The notes beneath the pieces are model-generated. The model was given only the letters and a program-made list of their open reading frames with translations, did no database searches and was not told the origin of the DNA. From the IMG/VR virus record IMGVR_UViG_3300005613_000001, positions 372,001 through 436,000 of that record: DNA of 64,000 nucleotides; one strand, 5' to 3'. The stretch's first letter is position 1, and each line of letters begins with the position of its first letter. This document shows, piece by piece, positions 1,012 through 38,828 of this stretch. The position numbers and the translations under genes are program-made.

Positions 1012-1761
1012 ATGAACATAATTGTCAATACAATATGCTGGAATGAAGAGAAGATGTTACCTTTCTTTTTGAAGTATTATGAGCAATTCGCCTCTGAAAT
1101 CATAGTACATGACAATTATTCAACTGATGAATCGCCTCAGATTATTAAAAAGCACCCTAAAGCTAAGCTAAAGCATTTTTTCACAGGTGATAAATCTAGA
1201 GAGGATGTAGAGATTAAGGTAAAGGGACATGCTTGGAAGAAGTACCGAAGGGCTGATTGGGTTATAAATGTGGATATTGATGAGTACCTTTATCACCCTG
1301 ATCTTCTGGGGTTTTTAGATAAGTGCAAAAAGAAAGGCATTACAGCCCCCACCCCAAAGGGCTATGAAATGATAAGTGATAGGTTCCCCAATTACGGCAG
1401 TCATATTTTTGAGCAAGTTCAGTGGGGAATGAGAAAGCACAAGATGGATAAGATGGCTATATTTGATCCCAGAGAAATTCAAGAAGTGAATTATGGCCCT
1501 GGATGCCACCCCCCTAGAGGCCCACAGGCGCATATGTTTCAACCCAAAGGAAACATTGTGAGTCGTCGGAACCCTGATTTTAAATTACTTCACTTCAAAT
1601 TCCTCGGATTTGAATACGTTCGCCAAAGATATGAGGTATTGGGGGCTAGAAAAAGCCAAGAAGATATTGCATGTACTTACGGAATGTGTTATTTTGATAG
1701 CGCCAGGAAGCTTATGAAGCGATTTAACAAAATAAAAGCTAATTCCGTAAAGGTGGTATAG
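1012..1761 (+). CDS. GT2-like glycosyltransferase
   Basis: CWNEEKML, DNYSTD, VDIDE (DxD) motifs; AAGGAG RBS. Confidence 0.85.
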   Translation: MNIIVNTICWNEEKMLPFFLKYYEQFASEIIVHDNYSTDESPQIIKKHPKAKLKHFFTGDKSREDVEIKVKGHAWKKYRRADWVINVDIDEYLYHPDLLGFLDKCKKKGITAPTPKGYEMISDRFPNYGSHIFEQVQWGMRKHKMDKMAIFDPREIQEVNYGPGCHPPRGPQAHMFQPKGNIVSRRNPDFKLLHFKFLGFEYVRQRYEVLGARKSQEDIACTYGMCYFDSARKLMKRFNKIKANSVKVV

Positions 1762-28572: not shown

Positions 28573-29097
28573 ATGGATTTCAAAGAGTGGATTATAGAAG
28601 AGTCATCTCTAAATGACCTATATCAAAGTGCGGTAGATGCGTTCCCCAACTGTCGTAAGCGTCAGCATTCCATTGATGAAATCACAATTACAAGATTAGA
28701 GTGGGTGCCTTATCGTGGAATGAGAACCCTTTTTATAAAAGGGCTAGCTCAAAATACCTCAAATGGGCACGAATATTCTCCGGTTGTTGTCTTTAAAGGA
28801 GTTCAGTACCACAATGAAGGCGAAGGAAATCTTGTAGAAATTATTGATAATAATGGGGTTCGCCATTTCTTCGAAAAGCTGTCAAATCAAGACACTCAAA
28901 TTCTCACAAAATGTACGTGCAAGGACTATGAATGGAGATTTAGGCATAAAAACTTTGAAGATCACTCACATCAGGGAAGAGATAGAACACCTTATGTTGC
29001 ATTGTTTAACCCTGGCATAGCTGATATTGCCCCTGGTTTGTGCAAACACATTATGAAATTAGCTCATGTTTTGTCGGAATCTGGAATTACTGGTTGA
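28573..29097 (+). CDS. SWIM Zn-finger protein with CTS-like start (MDFKEWIIEE)
   Basis: CTCKDY...CKH. Confidence 0.8.
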   Translation: MDFKEWIIEESSLNDLYQSAVDAFPNCRKRQHSIDEITITRLEWVPYRGMRTLFIKGLAQNTSNGHEYSPVVVFKGVQYHNEGEGNLVEIIDNNGVRHFFEKLSNQDTQILTKCTCKDYEWRFRHKNFEDHSHQGRDRTPYVALFNPGIADIAPGLCKHIMKLAHVLSESGITG

Positions 29098-29127
29098 TTT
29101 TTAATGGCAGTTTAACTATTATAGTGT

Positions 29128-29904
29128 ATGCCTAGAAAATTAAAAAATCTTATTGGACACACATTTGGCAAACTCACTGTTGTTAAATATGCTGGACTCA
29201 AACCAGCAGGTAAACAAAAACAATCGGCATGGTTATGCAAGTGTGAATGTGGAACCATTGTTGAAGTGCTAAATAATAATCTCAAAAAAGGCAATACTAA
29301 GTCTTGTGGATGTCATCATAAGAAGCGAGCCAAAGAAGCCAATCTTATAGATATATCAGGTAAAAAATACGGTCTGTTGCAAGCTCTAGAATATGTTGAA
29401 TCCCGAAATCGCAACGCCTATTGGAAATGTATTTGTGAGTGTGGCAAAGAAACCATAGTATCATCTTGTGGACTAAAAAGCGGCGGTGTAAAATCTTGCG
29501 GGTGTAGACAAGGTAATTTTATTCATGGAGAATGGTCAAAAGGAAGAGCAAATTATTCAAGATATAGAAGACAAGATCCGCTTGTAAGATTGAGACATAA
29601 TGTAAGTGCTGCTATTCGTGATTCCCTTAAATATAAATCAAATAAATCTATTTTTGATTATTTGCCCTATACATTTCAAGAATTAAAAGAACATTTAGAA
29701 TCACAATTTGAATCGTGGATGACGTGGGATAATTATGGCGGCAAGAGCAATGATGAGCGAAAAACCTGGCACATGGACCACATACAACCCCAATGTAAAT
29801 TTTCTTATCAATCACTTGACGACCCTCTAATGGTTGAATGCTGGGCATTATCCAACCTTCAACCATTAGAGAAAAAAACCAACTTTTCAAAAGGAGCTAA
29901 ATAA
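29128..29904 (+). CDS. HNH homing endonuclease
   Basis: two W.C.CECG..KSCGC repeats; WHMDHI..NLQPL...N. Confidence 0.9.
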   Translation: MPRKLKNLIGHTFGKLTVVKYAGLKPAGKQKQSAWLCKCECGTIVEVLNNNLKKGNTKSCGCHHKKRAKEANLIDISGKKYGLLQALEYVESRNRNAYWKCICECGKETIVSSCGLKSGGVKSCGCRQGNFIHGEWSKGRANYSRYRRQDPLVRLRHNVSAAIRDSLKYKSNKSIFDYLPYTFQELKEHLESQFESWMTWDNYGGKSNDERKTWHMDHIQPQCKFSYQSLDDPLMVECWALSNLQPLEKKTNFSKGAK

Positions 29905-30084
29905 ATGAAAATTTCAGTAATAGTAACAGATCAGGGCAACGGGGGAGCTTATTGTCCGAATTGCCATAAATGTCTTGATAATGGAGATCCCCGCATCAAG
30001 TTCCCCTCAAAGTGCCCCAAATGTGAAGTTGAATTTACAGGTGTTGATGAACCCTGGCTCAGCCCAGGTGGGAGTGATTTTTAA
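29905..30084 (+). CDS. small Zn-ribbon protein
   Basis: hand-translated; CPNC..CPKC; AAGGAG RBS. Confidence 0.6.
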   Translation: MKISVIVTDQGNGGAYCPNCHKCLDNGDPRIKFPSKCPKCEVEFTGVDEPWLSPGGSDF

Positions 30085-30086
30085 AC

Positions 30087-30119
30087 AAAAAAGGCCCCTT
30101 TCTAACGAAAGGGGCCTTT
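30087..30119. terminator. bidirectional terminator closing the cas locus
   Basis: AAAAAAGGCCCCTTTC TAAC GAAAGGGGCCTTT. Confidence 0.88.
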
Positions 30120-30164
30120 CCCAAGGGCTTCGAGTCATTGTCCAATCTTATGTGACGACACCCC

Positions 30165-30199
30165 GTTTCGACCCACACGGTCAGATAAATTCTGCCATG
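30165..30199 (-). CRISPR. solitary degenerate repeat overlapping the cas3 stop
   Basis: hairpin CATGG-CAGA/TCTG-A-CCGTG followed by TGGGTCGAAAC (repeat handle is TGGGTTGAAAC). Confidence 0.55.
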
Positions 30200-32388
30200 T
30201 AACCTAGAAAGTTAGGATCATAGGCACCCTTCCAAATGTAAAATCCATCTTCATTTTTTACAACAGGACACTTATCTTTCTTTTTCTCATATATCTGAAC
30301 GCTGTTTCTTGTAATCTCGTTTCGTGAAAGTGGATCATTCTTTAGAACGCTAGGATCAATAACTGCTGCAAATTTCAATGCGTTAATAACACGAAAATAC
30401 TCACCCACAGTTCTTAATTTCCCAGCATTCTCAGCCCGAACCAATTCTTCAATTGTGTACCCTTTGTCGTCGGGCTCTCTTTTTATCTTCTTTTCTTTTT
30501 CTGTTTCTAGTTGTAATTTGGCCGCTGCATCACACATTTCCGGGCCATAAGTCCCCTTTTTGTAAAAATCTCTGAATATCTTCGCAGGAATTTGGAATTC
30601 AGGATTTTCTGTAAATGGGTTGAAAGGATTAAAATTATCTTCATCTTGCTGTTCAAGTTCAAATATCTGAATAAAAGAATCTCTATAAAGACCTTCCCTG
30701 TTAATCCTTCCTTTGCACTGATGAGCATTATCTAGCCCTGCAATTTCTCTAAATCCATAACGGAATGAGAAATCAATTCCACACTCTACGCAAGATGTGG
30801 CTACAAGAATCCAATCATCATTCGGGCGATTTTTTAATTTCTTTATCACTCTATCCAATATTGCTTGTCTATCTTTGGGAGTAAGACAAGTTGATAGGTG
30901 TTCGACCTCTTTGCCTTGTTCATATAATGTTTTGGCAACTATAGCTGCATTTTTGATTGTATTAAATACAGCTAATTTTGGACCTTGAGGCTTAGAAATC
31001 ATTCTGCAAACACTTTGCAACGTATGCTTCCAAGGAGAATACCTTATTTCCACTCTCCCATTCTCTCTCTCAAGTGTTTTTTTGCTCAATTTAGGAGGAA
31101 TGATAGAGGGAACTTCAAAATCAAAACCACTTAATTCCTTAAAATAAGCATCCTCCCAAGGTCTAATTAGTGAACCTGAAGAAAAGAGCACTTTGCACCC
31201 TAGATTTTCAACAAGATATTTAAGCGACTTTAGTGCTAAAGGCCAAAAAATCAGAGGTATTGAAATGTGGGATTCATCAATAATGATAAAAGATCCTGCG
31301 AAGTTATGCAGTTTCCTTAATTTTCTTGTCCTACAAGCCAATAAAGATTCAAAAAACTGTACTGCTGTTGTGCAAACAATGGGACAGCTACATGTTGTTG
31401 CTAGAGCTTTTGCCCGAATACCCCTTCCTACGTCCTCATCATCTTCTACTTGATGATGATATTCGCCTACTGTTTCTGGTCCCTCATTTGGAAGTAACAA
31501 TTTGCGATATGTGTTCACACTTTGTGATATAATAGAGCAAAATGGAGCCACATAAATTATTTTCCTTGGATTCTGTTTAAGGGCATAAGCCATTAAAGCC
31601 GTAGTTTTCCCTGTTCCCACTTCGCTAGGACAACAAACAACGGGAGCCTCAACAGGAGAATTTCTACAAGCCCCATATACCGATGCCCTTATTCTATTTC
31701 TATCGTTATTTTCACTTTCTTTTTGCAAATTGTGAATGTAAGTATCTAATATTTTAAGTCGTTTCTCGGCATCTAGTTCTAACTCCGATTCAATTACAAA
31801 ATTGCCATAATGTTGGGCTGTATCATGCCAATCTGCGTCTACCAAGCATGATAAAGCAATTCTCATTAAATTGGGTGAAAGTTTATTGGGCGAATCTCCT
31901 TGTATGTCTTTTATTGTCTTGCTATGCTTTTCAACTAGCGATGGCAACATTTCATCAAAATAATCGCAAACCATACCATCATAATCAACCCAAGGGGTTC
32001 TATCTCTAACTAAATTCTCATCTCTATAATCCACACCTGTTGGTGAGTAATCACAATAACCTCTATGGTGCGACACTACCATCCATGCTGCTGGTAAATG
32101 TTTTTCGGAGATAAGATGGGCCGTGCCCGCATCAACATGATTGGGCATCTTGCCATTTTTTTCTCCCCTTAGCACTATTTGGTTGTGTTTTCCAAGTTTG
32201 CCCAAATCATGCCATCTCGCGGCTTTTAAGACAATTAATGACAATGCCTCAAAGTCACTTTTGTTTAAATGCGGGCGTATTTTCTCTAAATTATATTCAC
32301 ATTTACGACAAACCCCTTCAATGTGAGAGGGGTATGTTTGAACCGGAATCCCACGCTCTATGTCTGCTGAATGTGCTAGGTATTCCAT
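30181..32388 (-). CDS. cas3: Cas3 HD nuclease-helicase
   Basis: AHS, WHDLGK, SHH, LVDADW; GTGKTT, IIDESH, GIDFS, Q..GRINREG. Confidence 0.95.
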   Translation of the reverse strand: MEYLAHSADIERGIPVQTYPSHIEGVCRKCEYNLEKIRPHLNKSDFEALSLIVLKAARWHDLGKLGKHNQIVLRGEKNGKMPNHVDAGTAHLISEKHLPAAWMVVSHHRGYCDYSPTGVDYRDENLVRDRTPWVDYDGMVCDYFDEMLPSLVEKHSKTIKDIQGDSPNKLSPNLMRIALSCLVDADWHDTAQHYGNFVIESELELDAEKRLKILDTYIHNLQKESENNDRNRIRASVYGACRNSPVEAPVVCCPSEVGTGKTTALMAYALKQNPRKIIYVAPFCSIISQSVNTYRKLLLPNEGPETVGEYHHQVEDDEDVGRGIRAKALATTCSCPIVCTTAVQFFESLLACRTRKLRKLHNFAGSFIIIDESHISIPLIFWPLALKSLKYLVENLGCKVLFSSGSLIRPWEDAYFKELSGFDFEVPSIIPPKLSKKTLERENGRVEIRYSPWKHTLQSVCRMISKPQGPKLAVFNTIKNAAIVAKTLYEQGKEVEHLSTCLTPKDRQAILDRVIKKLKNRPNDDWILVATSCVECGIDFSFRYGFREIAGLDNAHQCKGRINREGLYRDSFIQIFELEQQDEDNFNPFNPFTENPEFQIPAKIFRDFYKKGTYGPEMCDAAAKLQLETEKEKKIKREPDDKGYTIEELVRAENAGKLRTVGEYFRVINALKFAAVIDPSVLKNDPLSRNEITRNSVQIYEKKKDKCPVVKNEDGFYIWKGAYDPNFLGYMAEFI

Positions 32389-32406
32389 TTTTTGTCCACG
32401 TATAAT

Positions 32407-33587
32407 ATTTCAACCCACGCCATATCAAATGACGAACGCCTCTTGTTATTATCCGCCGCCTCCTCGCCAGTTTCAACCCACGCCATATTAAATGACGAAC
32501 TTGAGCAGGGAAGTGGCTTCCTTTGGTGAATGTTTCAACCCACGCCATATTAAATGACGACTTTCCCGTAGCACGCCGAAAGGATAGTATGGGTTTCAAC
32601 CCACGCCATATTAAATGACGACTTCTCCTGTTTCGGTTTCCTTGGCATTCCGCAGTTTCAACCCACGCCATATCAAATGACGATTGTAAGTAAGCTCCCG
32701 CGAATTATTCTCATCGTTTCAACCCACGCCATATCAATGACGATTGTTAGACGCAATCATTTTGTCGGTGAGTAGCCGCCGTTCGTCGTTTCAACCCACG
32801 CCATATCAAATGACGATTGTTACGTCGCAGAAAGCCTAACGGGATGTGGCTAACGTGTTTCAACCCACGCCATATCAAATGACGATTGTTAGACCCTCAT
32901 TCACGGGAGACTCTATAGTGCATCGTTTCAACCCACGCCATATCAAATGACGATTGTAAGTTGGAATAGATGCAGTCGCAGTCGTCGTTTCAACCCACGC
33001 CAAATGACGGTCGCTTATGTCCTGCTGGGTGTATCCACAATTGTTTCAACCCACGCCATATCAAATGACGATTGTTAGGTAAATGCTACTGGACAGGACG
33101 GATCTATGTCTATGACGGGTTTCAACCCACGCCAAATGACGATTGTTAGTCGGCAGCAATTTCCACCGCCTCCCATTTTGAGTTTCCGTTTCAACCCACG
33201 CCATATCAAATGACGATTGTTAGTACGGGGAATACACCACTTGTGTAGGTGTAAGCGTCGTTTCAACCCACGCCATATCAAATGACGATTGTTAGGATCG
33301 TATGAACAGGGACAAGAGCCAATCCCGCCTCGTTTCAACCCACGCCATATCAAATGACGATTGTTAGCCCCTCTAGCGTCTTTTACTTTGTGCTTTTGTC
33401 CGGTCAGTTTCAACCCACGCCATATCAAATGACGATTGTTAGCCGCCTCAAATACGCATCATTCAAGCCAGAGGTAACAGTTTCAACCCACGCCATATCA
33501 AATGACGATTGTTAGAAAATCTAATGCAAGCTCGCCACCACTCCCAAACGTGTTTCAACCCACGCCATATCAAATGACGATTGTTAG
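32407..33587 (-). CRISPR. type I-C CRISPR array, 18 repeats / 17 spacers
   Basis: consensus CTAACAATCGTCATTTGATATGGCGTGGGTTGAAAC (36 nt), stem CGTCAT/ATGGCG plus 11-nt tail; degenerates toward cas3. Confidence 0.98.
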
Positions 33588-33752
33588 GGCTTATGATTTA
33601 AGTCCTTAACACTAAAAGACTTATGAAGGTGTTTTCGAGAGGTATCAAAAACCACTTTCATTTTTGAGCTTCTTTTTAATTGTTTATCAATTTGCATCAC
33701 CGTAAGTGGTTCTCATTGAGCCACTTACGGTGATGCGAGTGGTGCGGGAGGT
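33588..33752 (-). promoter_or_regulatory. CRISPR leader
   Basis: adjacent to the best-conserved repeats; two TAAGT-N15-ACTTA inverted repeats; 16-bp perfect stem at 33694-33736. Confidence 0.8.
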
Positions 33753-34643
33753 TTATTTAGCACGGAACCCTTCGAATTGGTTCAAATCCTCCACTGGGAA
33801 ATCAAAATCTGGTTGTGAGAACGTGTAATCCTCCAAGGAGTGAGATGCCATAGTAGGATCATCCCCTATCCTCACGGGAGTTAAAGATTCCCAGAATTTT
33901 CGTTCATCAAAACTGCCCAGTGGATTTGTGTGGTCAGCCCACCAAGTATGAAGGACATTCAGTGACCCAGGCGGGCGAGAAGTTGATGTGGAGGATGTAA
34001 AGATGTGCTTCAAAACATGTTTGAATACTTCTACGTCCTCTTGCGTAGTAAAGGTCCGCGTGGCAAGATTCGGATTAACCGAAATTCTTGATACATACAC
34101 TCCATGTGTAATGTATTTCTTGGCTCGGGGAGCCAAATCCGATTCTTCTTGCCGCAATGGGAACCTCTTAGACAATGTGCCGCCATCAAGTTTATTTACT
34201 TTTGCCACCGAAATGGCATTTGATAGCACAACAGGCCCAGTAGCAATAAAGTCAAATTCCTTTTCTTCTTTCTTGCCTTGGATTGCTGTTGTTCCGAATA
34301 GTCTAACATCCCAATACCAATTACAAAAGGCTTCAATGTCCTCACTCAGTTTGGAAGCTAATTTTTTGGCTTCAACACCATCTGAAGCATCTTTAAACCC
34401 TCGCAGCATAGATTCAAAGACATGAAATCTATCGGGATTAATTTCCAATCTTTCTTGCAAATACTGAAAGACCGGCGATTTATGATCTACAAATAAATCC
34501 CGCAGTTTTCTTTTCAGAGAACAATCACTGGCCCAACCATAACCATCAGAGGTTACTCGGGGTTCCCCTTCCCAATCGGGATCGCCATTGGGGTTTCCAA
34601 GGTTACATTCAAAGACGAGCAGACCTGAACTTCTTTTAATCAT
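33753..34643 (-). CDS. cas7: Cas7 (Csd2), type I-C
   Basis: GNPNGDPD...PR, SLKRKLRD, WDVRLFG, TGPV. Confidence 0.95.
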   Translation of the reverse strand: MIKRSSGLLVFECNLGNPNGDPDWEGEPRVTSDGYGWASDCSLKRKLRDLFVDHKSPVFQYLQERLEINPDRFHVFESMLRGFKDASDGVEAKKLASKLSEDIEAFCNWYWDVRLFGTTAIQGKKEEKEFDFIATGPVVLSNAISVAKVNKLDGGTLSKRFPLRQEESDLAPRAKKYITHGVYVSRISVNPNLATRTFTTQEDVEVFKHVLKHIFTSSTSTSRPPGSLNVLHTWWADHTNPLGSFDERKFWESLTPVRIGDDPTMASHSLEDYTFSQPDFDFPVEDLNQFEGFRAK

Positions 34644-34644
34644 G

Positions 34645-35031
34645 TTACTCTCCGTTTTCTTGGGGTTTTCTGTATGAGTATCCGGCTGCTAAAAGCAATG
34701 ATGCTTGGTGTGACAAGCTAGTAGGAAGTTGCCCGTGGGCCGCTTCTGTCATTCTTGACAATAACTCTTCATAGATTCTTACTGAGAAGTAGCAATTATC
34801 ACTTTCCTTTCTTTTGTAGTTTTTCGCCCAATCCAAATACACATTAAAATTTCTTACGAAACTATCCATTCCGCTATCTGGATTGGATCGAATTCCATAA
34901 AGGCTTTTTCCGCCAATCAATGTGGAGGGCACACTTGCCCCACGGCACATGAAAAACGCTCGGTGTATAGCACTCGCCTCTGTAAGAAGCCTCCCTAAAA
35001 GAAATGCCCAATGATTTTCGTAATCTTCCAT
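34645..35031 (-). CDS. cas11: Cas11 small subunit from internal in-frame start within cas8c
   Basis: AAGAAAGG-N7-ATG before MEDYENHWAFLLGRLL; 128 aa; internal translation is established for I-C. Confidence 0.65.
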   Translation of the reverse strand: MEDYENHWAFLLGRLLTEASAIHRAFFMCRGASVPSTLIGGKSLYGIRSNPDSGMDSFVRNFNVYLDWAKNYKRKESDNCYFSVRIYEELLSRMTEAAHGQLPTSLSHQASLLLAAGYSYRKPQENGE

Positions 35032-36453
35032 TTTCAAGCCTTTCTTGTACAAGATTAAATGACCTAGAGGTAAAAGATGCCTTAATAAGTAAGGCGCGTT
35101 TTTGTAATTACATCTAAAGACCATAGGAGCTACATGGGTTGCATAGTGTCTTTCAAATTTAGCAATTGCAGCCGGTTCATTAAAGAACAAATCATGCGCA
35201 TCCCAAATGTTGAAGCCATAAGATTTAACACTTGTAAATTTATCCTCTGCTCCATTGTAATTCCAAGTGCAATTACAAGCATCTACTACATTTCGGAGAT
35301 TTGGGTAGGCAACCTGGAAAATACTTCTGCCGTTTTGTATTCCGGCTTTCCATTCATTGACCCCATTTAATATCTCTTCTGAAGTGGCTGATTTAGAATA
35401 AACAACCCTTCCCACTTTCTTCTGTCCCACTAATTCTAAAACGACAATCCGGCCTACAACATCTCGTTTCTTTTGTTCCCTCATCATTTTTATAAGAGAT
35501 GCTGCCGATTCTTGCCAATCTTCTAAGGTAACCTCACTTTTTGATTCTAATGTTGTTTGATTAGGGAGTATGCTGCTCAGCACCCAATGGGATTTCATCA
35601 CTTTGCCATCTATATTTGTAACGGAGACGCTGTACCAAAGCCCTCCAACTTCCCTTTTATTTTTCTTATCATAATAAGCTTGATGCTCTGGAGATAGAAT
35701 GAAGTCAATCGCCCTTTCGATTTTCCTTCGAGAAGTAATTCCCAAAACGCAGCTTTGAGTGGAATTTAATCCAAAACGCTCAAAACATTGGTTTTTTTCA
35801 AATTTTGAAAAATATTGAATTTGAATATTGCCGGGCTTAACTTCAAAACCCTTTTTATCACTTCCGAAATTAGAATTGCCTAGAATATCTTTTTTCTCAT
35901 CATCTGCTTGCGGACTTTCTAATTGCCCATCTTCTAATTCAAATAATCGTTGACTAATCTTGCGAAGACAAGTAAAGCTTTGAACAGGGCACGGATAGTC
36001 AGAAGGTTTATCTACTTCTAACGCCACATGGAGAGGCTTGTCTTGGTAATATTCTGATAGTTGTTCTATGAAAGCATTTACATCAATCTTTTCTAAATGC
36101 TCTGCCAATTGTTTAAGTGCTAACAATTCCTCTGAACCATCAAAAACTTCTTTGCTGATTTCTATTGTTGTTTGTATTCTTGCTTTAATTCTCTCTAGCT
36201 TTTTCTCCTCATCTTCATCTTTCTTAGGACCAAAAGACAGCCCTATTGCTTTGTTGCTTTTTTTGTAGAATCTAAGATTTCGCCAAGCGTCAAAATCATT
36301 AATTTCTACAATTCCCTTTGGGCCAATGCGAACTTCAATGGCCTTTTGATTGGGATTGGATTTTAATTCACGGTGCCACTGTTCTCCGTCCTGCTCGGGC
36401 GAGATGCCCCAAGATTCTAAACTATCACAAAAAGAGAGCAATTCGTTCAACAT
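34645..36453 (-). CDS. cas8c: Cas8c large subunit (divergent)
   Basis: position between cas5 and cas7; MLNEL start, WHRELK, C-terminal AFLLGRLL..GY. Confidence 0.8.
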   Translation of the reverse strand: MLNELLSFCDSLESWGISPEQDGEQWHRELKSNPNQKAIEVRIGPKGIVEINDFDAWRNLRFYKKSNKAIGLSFGPKKDEDEEKKLERIKARIQTTIEISKEVFDGSEELLALKQLAEHLEKIDVNAFIEQLSEYYQDKPLHVALEVDKPSDYPCPVQSFTCLRKISQRLFELEDGQLESPQADDEKKDILGNSNFGSDKKGFEVKPGNIQIQYFSKFEKNQCFERFGLNSTQSCVLGITSRRKIERAIDFILSPEHQAYYDKKNKREVGGLWYSVSVTNIDGKVMKSHWVLSSILPNQTTLESKSEVTLEDWQESAASLIKMMREQKKRDVVGRIVVLELVGQKKVGRVVYSKSATSEEILNGVNEWKAGIQNGRSIFQVAYPNLRNVVDACNCTWNYNGAEDKFTSVKSYGFNIWDAHDLFFNEPAAIAKFERHYATHVAPMVFRCNYKNAPYLLRHLLPLGHLILYKKGLKMEDYENHWAFLLGRLLTEASAIHRAFFMCRGASVPSTLIGGKSLYGIRSNPDSGMDSFVRNFNVYLDWAKNYKRKESDNCYFSVRIYEELLSRMTEAAHGQLPTSLSHQASLLLAAGYSYRKPQENGE

Positions 36454-37154
36454 AGCTTACTCCATTCAACGTCAAGTTTTTGTTGAATTTTCTGATCCTG
36501 AAAAACTAAAATACCATCCCTCAAGGTCACTTCTTGATCTGTTAATCTTAAAACACCCGCCTCAATTTTTACATTTCTAGCTGTCACCACATCAACGCAT
36601 CCACCGGGTTTATCATCATCAAAGACAGACATAACCATAGTGGGAACATCAAAAGAGCAATCATTGATTTTGGTAATTGGTTTCCCCAAATATGTTGCCA
36701 TAAATTCTTTTCTACCCAAGGAAACAGGGTGGTAGGATTGTCCCCGCTTCAATCTTCTAAAGAATTGATTTTGGAAGGAATGGGCGCAATTAACATTTTG
36801 ATATTTGGCGGGGGATGGTTTGGAGTTTGTATTAAGTGCTAGAGCTAGAATTTGGAATCGCGGCCTAAGCAATACGGATTCATGGAGTTGTAAAGCATTG
36901 TCTTTTTCTATTTGATCTTTGAGGCGGAATGGGCTACGCGAATTATACGTATAGTGCGTATATTGAGGTTTTGCACATACTCCAATTGCTACTATTTCTA
37001 GTTTGACCCCCTTTATTCTACAGCATGATTCAATCATGCCTATACAAGCGGAAGGAGGAGGGAGGGGATAGCTAGCACTTTCACTACCTGTACACGGATC
37101 AGCAAACATCCCGAAGTCGCCAGCGATTTCAAAGCCGATAGGATAAGCAATCAT
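36447..37154 (-). CDS. cas5: Cas5 (Cas5d, crRNA-processing)
   Basis: FEIAGDFGMF.DP..SYP.PPPSA..GMIES, SLGRKEF. Confidence 0.92.
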   Translation of the reverse strand: MIAYPIGFEIAGDFGMFADPCTGSESASYPLPPPSACIGMIESCCRIKGVKLEIVAIGVCAKPQYTHYTYNSRSPFRLKDQIEKDNALQLHESVLLRPRFQILALALNTNSKPSPAKYQNVNCAHSFQNQFFRRLKRGQSYHPVSLGRKEFMATYLGKPITKINDCSFDVPTMVMSVFDDDKPGGCVDVVTARNVKIEAGVLRLTDQEVTLRDGILVFQDQKIQQKLDVEWSKLC

Positions 37155-37181
37155 CTTAAGTTCCTTTTATCCATTGAAAGT

Positions 37182-37415
37182 GTTTCAACCCACGTCATGT
37201 TAATGACGAATCCGCATGCTGCCGTCTGCCACTCGCATGACCTTCTTTCTTTCAACCCACGCCATACTAATGGCGATTGTTAATCTGAGCGACGATTGCT
37301 TGTAAGCCACAGCGCATGAGTTTCAATCCACGCCATATCAAATGACGATTGTTAGTCGCATATCACCCCTGTTGGTGGAGCCGCTGTTTTAACCCACGCC
37401 ATATCAAATGACGAT
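37182..37415 (-). CRISPR. mini-array, 4 divergent repeats / 3 spacers, upstream of cas5
   Basis: repeats at 37182, 37249, 37320, 37386; stems retained through stem-preserving substitutions. Confidence 0.92.
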
Positions 37416-37489
37416 CCACAGTACATTCATCGGCAAAATGACGACGATTGTGACCTACCACGTACAATTCCTTTTCCCCGTATTTTCCC

Positions 37490-37517
37490 ATAATAGCATA
37501 GGTCCATTGAAAGTAAA
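37490..37517 (-). promoter_or_regulatory. predicted promoter of mini-array/cas operon
   Basis: TTTACT-N16-(TG)TATTAT, same architecture as the promoters at 7280-7307 and 38912-38939. Confidence 0.65.
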
Positions 37518-37547
37518 GAGGAATTCTAGTACCAAAATCGGGGGGTT

Positions 37548-38483
37548 CTAATCCACCCACGATCTTGAATCTGGATGCGGAATATAGTTATCTGGCGTTT
37601 TGATTTTTCTACGACCATCATAAATTGGGATCTGATTAGCATAATCATACCATCCAAAAACTGGTTCGTCTTCTGCGCGAGCAAACAATAAATCACCCGA
37701 ACCCGCTTTAACATGATTGTTCATGAAGCTTCGTAGTTCTCCCGCCTCAATAACTTGATCTTGATTGGGGTCAATATCTGGGCTTTCTTCTGCGATTGCC
37801 ACTAATACTTTTTTCATAGGGTCAATTTGATCGCCCCAATAACTCACCTTATTTGCGGGAGAGCTTGCAATCATAGTAAAGAGTTTTTGCTGGTTTTCAG
37901 GCATGCTAGAGATTTCTGGAAGGCCGGAAGCTGCGTAACAAGCGGATTGCCACCATAATGTTTCTTGTTTGCATTCGCCCGCTGCCTCAGCAAAAATTCT
38001 ACCTATGACATCTCTCTTGCCAAATTCAGCCATAGAACCGCTTCGGCTGCCGTGACCACAGGTGTAAATGAAAAGCGTATCTCCTGATACGGCATCTGTT
38101 TTCATTTGTTCAATTAAAAATTCTTTCAAATTAGAAAGGGAAATCTTTTTACCTGACCAAACTACTCGATTGATTCTTGGACCCTCTCCATTAACAAGAT
38201 GCGCTCCAATGTCTTTGATTCTAAGACCTTTTGAGGCTGCTATGTTTGCTACCTCTAACGCTTGACCAGCATTTTTGTTTGCAATAGATTCTGTACAGTG
38301 TTTCAAAACCAAAAATCTAACAGATGTGCGACTGTTTAGTTCGACACTACCAATAAAGTGTTCTTCAACAGCCGGTGCTTGAACATAAAGAGGCGGACTT
38401 TCTTTTGTTTGGTTGCACTTAGAAAGGATTACACATCCCAAAATTAAAGCAGCTACAACTGTAAGTAACAATCGTGCTTTCAT
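37548..38483 (-). CDS. exported caspase-fold (clan CD) peptidase-like protein
   Basis: GDTLFIYTCGHG and QSACYA His/Cys dyad; signal peptide. Confidence 0.75.
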   Translation of the reverse strand: MKARLLLTVVAALILGCVILSKCNQTKESPPLYVQAPAVEEHFIGSVELNSRTSVRFLVLKHCTESIANKNAGQALEVANIAASKGLRIKDIGAHLVNGEGPRINRVVWSGKKISLSNLKEFLIEQMKTDAVSGDTLFIYTCGHGSRSGSMAEFGKRDVIGRIFAEAAGECKQETLWWQSACYAASGLPEISSMPENQQKLFTMIASSPANKVSYWGDQIDPMKKVLVAIAEESPDIDPNQDQVIEAGELRSFMNNHVKAGSGDLLFARAEDEPVFGWYDYANQIPIYDGRRKIKTPDNYIPHPDSRSWVD

Positions 38484-38531
38484 GATAACCTCCTTGATTG
38501 TTTTATGTTATCCTTACTCTTATATAGTGCC

Positions 38532-38828
38532 ATGAAAATCACTTTACAACAAGCAGTAGAATTAGGAATAATAACTCAAAAAGAAGCAGATGACGGTGGT
38601 GTTTATATTCCATCGCGCAAAGAGTTTTTTCCTTATAATAACATTTGGATTACAGAATATTTTTTACAAGATGTGCAAGCACGGCAAAGTATCGTTAATT
38701 CTGCTAGAGCAAGGGATATAACAGATCAAGATATTGATGATTGGCGAGAAGTGGGAAAACAATTAGATGCAATGGATTTCAAAGAAATCAGAAAGCGGGT
38801 TGTATTTGAGAGAGAAGATCATGGGTGA
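38532..38828 (+). CDS. hypothetical protein
   Basis: ORF after TATATA motif. Confidence 0.6.
   Translation: MKITLQQAVELGIITQKEADDGGVYIPSRKEFFPYNNIWITEYFLQDVQARQSIVNSARARDITDQDIDDWREVGKQLDAMDFKEIRKRVVFEREDHG

What the first reader, a model, noticed from the sequence alone, without database searches (positions are those of the whole stretch)
30087..30199. Cryptic solitary repeat at the cas3 stop followed by a 45-nt guide-like segment and terminator
Seen: a 9-bp bulged hairpin spanning the last cas3 codons ends exactly before TGGGTCGAAAC (10/11 match to the crRNA handle). It is followed by 45 nt (GGGGTGTCGTCACATAAG...) and a terminator stem, the same spacing as full array units. Inference: a third crRNA-like RNA (regulatory guide or decoy), or a Cas5d mRNA-processing site. 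I saw no target in the window but could not search exhaustively.
Basis: partly seen in the sequence, partly recalled or inferred. Interest (0 to 1): 0.6.

Follow-up and report, generated by a model that had tools for sequence, protein, structure and literature searches.

The report
Lone CRISPR repeat ending phage cas3
A single worn copy of the CRISPR repeat sits at the stop codon of cas3 in a huge phage's own CRISPR system, probably a leftover processing site that trims the cas3 message and sheds a guide-like RNA with no known target, so it belongs to a kind of element already described.

Summary
On the minus strand, a 9-bp bulged hairpin (30199-30176) contains the cas3 stop codon. It ends exactly before TGGGTCGAAAC (30175-30165), a 10/11 match to the locus handle TGGGTTGAAAC. 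Next come 42-45 nt and a strong terminator (30122-30087).

A handle match alone is within chance: 1.64 are expected per window and 4 lie outside the arrays. Only this one has a hairpin ending at the G before the handle, which occurs at 0.2-1.2% of random positions.

The window comes from a 527-kb phage contig. It carries a type I-C-like system without cas1/2/4, ordered array-cas5-cas8-cas7-array-cas3-lone repeat.

One relative (Cas3 47% identical) has a 3-repeat mini-array starting at its cas3 stop codon. Four more lineages have arrays 35-165 nt after cas3; twelve have none.

My best reading is a degenerate but probably still cleavable repeat. Cas5 cleavage would leave cas3 mRNA ending in a stable hairpin and release a crRNA-shaped RNA.

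No target was found, but two genuine spacers also found none, so that result says little. The repeat differs from the consensus at a handle position that is invariant in 45 other repeats. An inert relic therefore remains a strong rival.

It is a new member of the known standalone-repeat class.

The parts
30176..30199 (-). Hairpin of the solitary repeat. 5' arm 30199-30191 lies in the Y-M-A-E codons of cas3, loop 30190-30186, 3' arm 30185-30176 includes the TGA stop (30183-30181). 9 bp with one bulged A.
   Evidence: -9.5 kcal/mol; z = -3.25 for the 41-nt repeat-like segment.
30165..30175 (-). Handle-like 11-mer TGGGTCGAAAC, 10/11 to the locus handle. The odd base is C at 30170 (handle position 6).
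   Evidence: Position 6 is invariant T in 45 distinct repeats from 7 loci.
30123..30164 (-). No target found.
30087..30122 (-). Intrinsic terminator of the cas3 transcript (16-bp stem, 4-nt loop, T-run). It would serve as the 3' hairpin of the released RNA.
30181..32388 (-). cas3 (735 aa; helicase domains plus a conserved HD-type motif).
32407..33588 (-). CRISPR array 1, 18 handle-bearing repeats between cas7 and cas3. The last handle ends 18 nt before the cas3 ATG. The four cas3-proximal repeats are a variant form.
33753..34643 (-). cas7.
   Evidence: Cas_Cas7, E = 5e-40.
34645..36453 (-). Large subunit in the cas8c position. It has no Pfam hit.
   Evidence: the same position in relatives.
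36447..37154 (-). cas5 of the Cas5d/Cas5c kind, the presumed repeat-cutting enzyme.
   Evidence: Cas_Cas5d, E = 3e-6; solved type I-C Cas5, E = 4e-4.
37182..37418 (-). CRISPR array 2, 4 heterogeneous repeats upstream of cas5. The last handle ends 27 nt before the cas5 ATG.
29905..30084 (+). Convergent 59-aa ORF ending just before the shared terminator. This is context and not part of the element.

Best explanation
The element is a degenerate CRISPR repeat that forms the far boundary of a repeat-flanked cas3 gene in a huge phage's adaptation-less type I-C-like system.

Shown:
- The locus reads array-cas5-cas8-cas7-array-cas3-lone repeat-terminator on one strand.
- The last array repeat ends 18 nt before the cas3 start.
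- The lone repeat overlaps the cas3 stop.
- It fits the clade's repeat grammar: any short hairpin ending at a G, then the handle.

Inferred:
- The unit is transcribed through.
- The phage Cas5 cuts between G30176 and U30175.
- cas3 mRNA is then left ending in a hairpin of -9.5 kcal/mol, stronger than the -4.9 kcal/mol of ordinary repeats, in place of its terminator.
- A crRNA-shaped RNA is released: 11-nt handle, 42-45 nt, terminator hairpin. It could load into Cascade.

I think its main effect is on cas3 mRNA 3'-end formation, with the guide-like RNA as a by-product of unknown or no targeting function.
For: - Handle 10/11 plus the preceding G plus an anchored hairpin. Only 1 of 4 extra-array handle matches has these, and an anchored hairpin this good occurs at 0.2-1.2% of random positions.
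- 43 of 45 distinct repeats from 7 related loci have a hairpin ending at the G before the handle, with 37 different hairpin sequences. A new hairpin sequence is therefore normal for this clade.
- Cas5c enzymes are reported to recognise the stem base and the UGG just after the cut, and to tolerate loop and 5' changes (PMC8524198). All of these are intact here.
- Relative L002/L011 has a repeat starting within its cas3 stop codon, followed by two more. Arrays follow cas3 at +35 to +165 nt in L020, L005, L007 and L022.
- The spacing from handle to 3' hairpin is 42-45 nt, against a modal 44 nt in array units.
- The sequence is identical in a second assembly.
Against: - The one mismatch (C30170) is at handle position 6, which is T in all 45 compared repeats. 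This could abolish binding or cleavage.
- There is no repeat after cas3 in 12 of 18 lineages, including the nearest relative L028.
- The Cas3 tree is star-like, so a shared origin with L002 is not shown.
- The catalytic residues of this Cas5 were not verified. Al-Shayeb et al. note altered active-site residues in a huge-phage I-C variant (PMC7162821).
- There are no expression data.
- The 5' arm of the hairpin is constrained by conserved coding sequence. Only about 5 non-coding bases, one codon choice and the choice of stop codon are free to create the stem.
Confidence: 0.5

Rival explanations
1. Inert relic. This would be the last decayed repeat of an array that once followed cas3, as it still does in relatives. 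It would no longer be bound or cut, and the hairpin would be a coincidence of conserved coding sequence plus a few bases.
For: - The mismatch lies at an otherwise invariant handle position.
- Arrays after cas3 are common in the clade, so a remnant is expected.
- Distribution is patchy, and the repeat is absent in the nearest relative.
- No target was found.
- Shmakov et al. report that many standalone repeats are partially degraded and arise sporadically (PMC10120712).
Against: - The original hairpin is gone, yet a stronger one ends exactly at the right base. This has 0.2-1.2% probability by chance.
- The G|UGG cut context is retained.
- The spacing to the terminator hairpin matches array units.
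Confidence: 0.3
2. Regulatory crRNA-like guide (CreR/crlRNA type). The released RNA would load into Cascade and bind a partially matching site in the host or elsewhere in the 527-kb phage genome, repressing transcription without cleavage.
For: - It has crRNA-like geometry.
- This class exists in type I loci, often next to cas3 (PMC10120712; CreR preprint 10.1101/2023.03.10.532045).
- L002's post-cas3 mini-array has non-standard, duplicated spacers that do not look acquired.
Against: - No seed match of at least 10/10 anywhere else in the 64-kb window. The best was 9/10 with no PAM or extension.
- No match to the cas locus's own intergenic regions.
- No match for L002's spacers in its own locus.
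- The other 463 kb of the phage was searched only for long matches.
Confidence: 0.12
3. Decoy (Racr-like). The lone repeat would soak up Cas5/Cas7 of a host type I-C system, or of the phage's own, forming dead-end complexes.
For: Phage solitary repeat units do this. RacrIC1 sits 11 nt after a protein gene and is co-transcribed with it (PMC10651486).
Against: - It lies inside the phage's own cas operon, beside 22 ordinary repeats that would bind the same proteins.
- No acr gene neighbour was identified.
- Racr units are described as not associated with cas genes.
Confidence: 0.05
4. Pure chance resemblance in an ordinary 3' UTR.
For: About 1.6 handle-like 11-mers are expected per window, and three others are evidently chance.
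Against: The joint expectation with the anchored hairpin is about 0.003-0.02 per window. The site is also on the right strand and at the right place, and L002 offers a parallel.
Confidence: 0.03

Closest known systems
Standalone repeat-like / crRNA-like elements inside CRISPR-cas loci (Shmakov et al. 2023, PMC10120712; CreR and CreA mini-CRISPRs)
   Same: A degraded copy of the locus's own repeat, outside the array, in a UTR of cas3, followed by a spacer-like stretch.
   Different: - Those with a shown function have a spacer partly matching a cas or cargo promoter next to a PAM, and none was found here.
- Enrichment near cas3 was reported for I-E, I-D and I-F1, not for I-C.
- Here the repeat's hairpin is built from cas3 coding sequence and the stop codon.
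- A terminator replaces the second repeat.
Phage solitary repeat units acting as RNA anti-CRISPRs (Racr; RacrIC1), PMC10651486
   Same: Phage-borne, type I-C-like single repeat, placed a few nucleotides after a protein gene and co-transcribed with it.
   Different: Racrs sit in acr loci away from cas genes and act against a host system. This one ends the phage's own cas operon.
Canonical type I-C repeat processed by Cas5c/Cas5d
   Same: [quoted passage not shown]
   Different: - The stem is 9 bp and bulged, against 6 bp.
- It has no 5' repeat part.
- The handle carries C at position 6.
- There is no downstream partner repeat.
Adaptation-less type I-C variant systems of huge phages (Al-Shayeb et al. 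2020, PMC7162821)
   Same: A huge-phage locus with cas5-cas8-cas7 and no cas1/2/4, with Cas5 as the presumed processing enzyme.
   Different: The published variant has a helicase in place of Cas3. This locus has a full Cas3 with a conserved HD-type motif.

Membership tests
CRISPR repeat of this locus (type I-C-like) | 11-nt handle matching the locus consensus | tested here: met
   10/11 match. The mismatch is at a position invariant in 45 repeats.
CRISPR repeat of this locus (type I-C-like) | Hairpin whose 3' arm ends at the G immediately before the handle | tested here: met
   The same rule holds in 43 of 45 clade repeats.
CRISPR repeat of this locus (type I-C-like) | 5' repeat part (CTAACAAT) and hairpin sequence homologous to the array repeats | tested here: not met
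   Local alignment recovers only the 12 nt GTGGGT[T/C]GAAAC. The hairpin sequence is unrelated to the array hairpin.
CRISPR repeat of this locus (type I-C-like) | Cleavage by Cas5 | not testable with these tools
   Needs an in vitro assay or RNA end mapping.
CreR/CreA-type regulatory mini-CRISPR (crRNA-like RNA) | Degenerate repeat(s) flanking a spacer-like segment within a cas locus | tested here: met
   One repeat plus 42-45 nt. The second repeat is replaced by a terminator.
CreR/CreA-type regulatory mini-CRISPR (crRNA-like RNA) | Spacer seed partly complementary to a cas or toxin promoter next to a PAM | tested here: not met
   No seed match of at least 10/10 in the window besides itself. 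The rest of the phage genome was searched only for long matches.
Racr (RNA anti-CRISPR solitary repeat unit) | Solitary repeat on a mobile element, not associated with cas genes, often beside acr genes | tested here: not met
   It lies at the end of the phage's own cas operon.
Racr (RNA anti-CRISPR solitary repeat unit) | Inhibits a CRISPR-Cas system by sequestering Cas proteins | not testable with these tools
   Needs an interference assay.
Type I-C CRISPR-Cas | cas5d/c, cas8c, cas7 and cas3 present, no cas6 | tested here: met
   Pfam hits for Cas5d, Cas7 and the Cas3 domains. The large subunit is assigned by position only.
Type I-C CRISPR-Cas | Adaptation genes cas1, cas2 and cas4, and the order cas3-cas5-cas8-cas7 | tested here: not met
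   None lie adjacent to the cas locus, and cas3 is last. Only the nine ORFs at and next to the locus were family-scanned. The same layout occurs in relatives.

The most novel reading that the evidence does not exclude
In this clade of huge-phage type I-C-like systems, cas3 is embedded in the array like a giant spacer. Cas5 cutting at the flanking repeats would then set both ends of the cas3 mRNA and feed back on Cas3 production.

In the window, the upstream handle ends 18 nt before the ATG and the downstream repeat contains the stop codon. In L007, the only start codon lies inside the last repeat, so cutting would decapitate the message.

The released 3' RNA would be a built-in non-targeting or regulatory Cascade cargo.
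Probability: 0.15. Interest if true: 0.6.

Novelty: new member of a known kind. Interest (0 to 1): 0.36.

Why it matters
If Cas5 really cuts here, this would be a case where a CRISPR repeat doubles as the 3' end of a cas gene. It would link guide processing to Cas3 expression in phage-borne systems that cannot acquire spacers. That would add type I-C and huge phages to the list of systems with repeat-derived regulatory RNA elements. If it is an inert relic, it only documents how arrays decay and move around cas3 in these phages.

Tried and rejected
- Target search for the 45-nt segment. Window scans of full length and of seed positions 1-5 and 7-11 found only itself, the best other hit being 9/10 without extension.
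- IMG/VR was searched with two 20-specified-base patterns, with N at every sixth position. Only the source contig matched.
- GTDB species genomes gave no match.
- Control: two genuine array spacers searched the same way also hit only themselves. These negatives therefore carry little weight.
- A possible second decayed repeat inside the 45 nt (the GTCGTCA... start). Alignment to the repeat is not significant: 74/2000 and 633/2000 shuffles score as well. Rejected.
- Rfam scan of 29000-38600. Nothing relevant, only two sub-threshold sRNA hits, one on the terminator.
- Megablast of the locus against the phage collection found no match. A single-protein Cas3 scan of genome contigs found no relative.
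- A covariance model of the repeat was considered. I dropped it because the ungapped alignment (A3) does not align the 5' arms of hairpins with different loop sizes. I used an anchored-hairpin test instead.
- The Cas5 catalytic triad could not be mapped from the weak alignments to solved Cas5c.
- Nam et al. 2012 (PMC3479641) is not held in the library.

Full report
**What is there**

The finding lies on the minus strand. The 735-aa ORF 30181-32388 is Cas3: Pfam finds DEAD, Helicase_C and Cas3-like_C_2, and an HD-type motif is conserved across relatives. It ends ...GYMAEFI with TGA at 30183-30181.

- CATGGCAGA (30199-30191) pairs with TCTGACCGTG (30185-30176) around the loop ATTTA. This gives 9 pairs with one bulged A, and the stop codon lies inside the 3' arm.
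- The next base starts TGGGTCGAAAC (30175-30165).
- A 16-bp terminator follows at 30122-30087, with a T-run.

**Context**

The window is part of IMGVR_UViG_3300005613_000001, a 527-kb viral contig. An independent assembly (L010) has the identical sequence here.

On the same strand, reading 5' to 3', the locus is:
- array 2, with 4 heterogeneous repeats (37418 to 37182);
- cas5 (37154-36447; Cas_Cas5d, E = 3e-6);
- a large subunit in the cas8c position (36453-34645);
- cas7 (34643-33753);
- array 1, with 18 handle-bearing repeats (33588 to 32407);
- cas3;
- the lone repeat and the terminator.

No cas1, cas2 or cas4 lies adjacent to the cas locus. The standard repeat is 36 nt: an 8-nt 5' part, a 6-bp hairpin with a 5-nt loop, then the 11-nt handle TGGGTTGAAAC. 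The last repeat handle ends 18 nt before the cas3 ATG and 27 nt before the cas5 ATG. No strong separate promoter stands out. The cas mRNAs therefore appear to be cut out of array-containing transcripts.

**Is it more than chance?**

The handle alone is not. Matches with at most 1 mismatch are expected 1.64 times per window, and four lie outside the arrays. Only the one at the cas3 stop is preceded by G and by a hairpin whose 3' arm ends at that G.

Among 20,000 random window positions, 1.2% have such an anchored hairpin with at least 6 bp and -6 kcal/mol or better. Only 0.2% have one as good as this (at least 8 bp, -9 kcal/mol or better). The joint expectation is about 0.003-0.02 per window. 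That figure does not yet count that the site is on the cas strand, six bases after the last cas gene.

**Does it fit the family's repeat grammar?**

I collected 45 distinct repeats from the window and six related loci. An ungapped alignment shows these columns invariant: the G before the handle, and handle positions 1, 2, 5, 6, 9 and 10. In 43 of the 45 a hairpin ends at that G, yet there are 37 different hairpin sequences.

The rule in this clade is therefore 'any short hairpin, G, then the handle'. The lone repeat obeys it, with a longer and more stable stem (-9.5 against -4.9 kcal/mol). It breaks one invariant: C instead of T at handle position 6 (30170).

Published work on Cas5c enzymes places recognition at the stem base and at the UGG immediately after the cut, with tolerance for loop and 5' changes (PMC8524198; review PMC5965381). 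Those features are intact here. The effect of position 6 is unknown to me.

**Relatives**

Cas3 homologues at 39-47% identity come from large, phage-like contigs. I surveyed 18 lineages including the window.

- Repeats follow cas3 in six: the window; L002/L011; L020 (+35 nt); L005 (+120); L007/L008 (+140); L022 (+165, with the same handle as the window).
- In L002/L011 the first repeat begins within the cas3 stop codon and two more follow. The C-terminal peptides are homologous (GYMAHFV* against GYMAEFI*).
- The other twelve have a gene or unrelated sequence after cas3. This includes L028, which groups with the window on the Cas3 tree and has the canonical order cas3 then cas5.
- The tree is otherwise star-like, so I cannot show that the window and L002 inherited the stop-adjacent repeat from a common ancestor.

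The end of cas3 is thus a usual place for arrays in this clade, and a lone repeat there is most simply what remains of one.

**Is the 45-nt segment a guide?**

Its length to the 3' hairpin (42-45 nt) equals the modal 44 nt of leader-proximal array units. The overall range is about 33-48 nt. The released RNA would therefore have crRNA geometry, with the terminator standing in for the repeat hairpin.

I found no target:
- nothing in the window beyond itself, by full-length or seed scan;
- nothing in IMG/VR, including the rest of the source contig, for two 23-nt patterns with every sixth base free;
- nothing in GTDB species genomes.

L002's post-cas3 spacers also match nothing in their own locus. 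Two genuine spacers searched the same way found only themselves. These negatives therefore do not separate a real guide from a non-guide. A hint of a second decayed repeat at the start of the segment is not significant.

**Mechanism I consider most likely (confidence about 0.5)**

- The array-cas3 unit is transcribed through to the terminator.
- Cas5 cuts after G30176.
- cas3 mRNA is left with a stable 3' hairpin in place of its terminator.
- An RNA of about 90-95 nt with a 5' handle is released and may enter Cascade.

The anatomy, the grammar fit and the parallels in relatives are shown. Transcription, cleavage and loading are inferred.

The strongest rival (about 0.3) is an inert relic. It is favoured by the hit on an invariant handle position and by the patchy distribution. 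A regulatory guide (about 0.12), a decoy (about 0.05) and chance (about 0.03) follow.

**Comparison with what is known**

Standalone repeat-like sequences in cas loci are a described class. They occur in 25-29% of cas3 UTRs in I-E, I-D and I-F1 systems. Many are degraded, and some form regulatory mini-arrays that match cas promoters (PMC10120712; CreR preprint).

Phage solitary repeat units can act as RNA anti-CRISPRs. One of these is a type I-C unit placed 11 nt after acrIC5 (PMC10651486). Huge phages with adaptation-less I-C variants are also known (PMC7162821).

This element belongs to the first class by anatomy. It fails that class's functional hallmark (a promoter match) as far as I could test, and it does not fit the Racr context. 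What is unusual is that the hairpin is made of cas3 coding sequence plus the stop codon, and that a terminator supplies the 3' hairpin.

**Verdict**

This is a real, repeat-derived element and a new member of a known kind. Its function is unproven and its interest is moderate to low.

Noticed in passing
L007:3968-4003 (IMGVR_UViG_3300037067_022526): The only in-frame start codon of cas3 (ATG 3977) lies inside the hairpin of the last array repeat, and the 11-nt handle is translated (MKSRVNCN-LAHS...). Cas5 cutting at that repeat would remove the start codon. This suggests that processing and Cas3 translation exclude each other.
   Followed up: partly
window 32389-32417 and 37155-37192 (minus strand): The last repeat handles end 18 nt before the cas3 ATG and 27 nt before the cas5 ATG. 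Processed cas mRNAs would therefore begin with a crRNA 5' handle, and Cas5/Cas7 binding there could occlude the start codons.
   Followed up: no
L002:6073-6937, L020:1084-3642, L003:1930-3286, window 32407-32629 and 37182-37418: Arrays in this adaptation-less phage clade have very heterogeneous repeats. For example, 13 of 13 are distinct in L002 and 32 of 38 in L020. Stem changes are compensatory and the handle is conserved. Spacer lengths are irregular, with units of 45-65 nt in the window.
   Followed up: partly
L002:6965-6998: Just upstream of the cas3 ATG there is a perfect 13-bp hairpin. Its 3' arm is the reverse complement of a repeat end with the window-type handle (GGCGTGGGTTGAAA). The 85-nt region scores z = -4 on folding. 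It could be an anti-repeat or an attenuator-like structure.
   Followed up: partly
L002:9238-9400: The two 'spacers' of the post-cas3 mini-array share their first 5 nt and last roughly 21 nt. One is the other plus a 28-nt insert, so they arose by duplication and not by acquisition. They match nothing else in the 13.6-kb locus.
   Followed up: partly
window 1536-1546 (minus strand): An exact copy of the handle TGGGTTGAAAC lies antisense inside a 249-aa plus-strand ORF. It has no preceding G or hairpin and is probably chance.
   Followed up: yes
window 32987-33019 and 33119-33151 (minus strand): Two array-1 repeats lack 5 nt of the loop and 3' arm (CGTCATTTGGCG), which leaves only a 4-bp stem.
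   Followed up: no
L028:2394-2515: The relative that groups with the window on the Cas3 tree has the canonical order cas3 then cas5, with a promoter-like TTGACT right after the cas3 stop. Gene order around cas3 is therefore fluid in this clade.
   Followed up: partly
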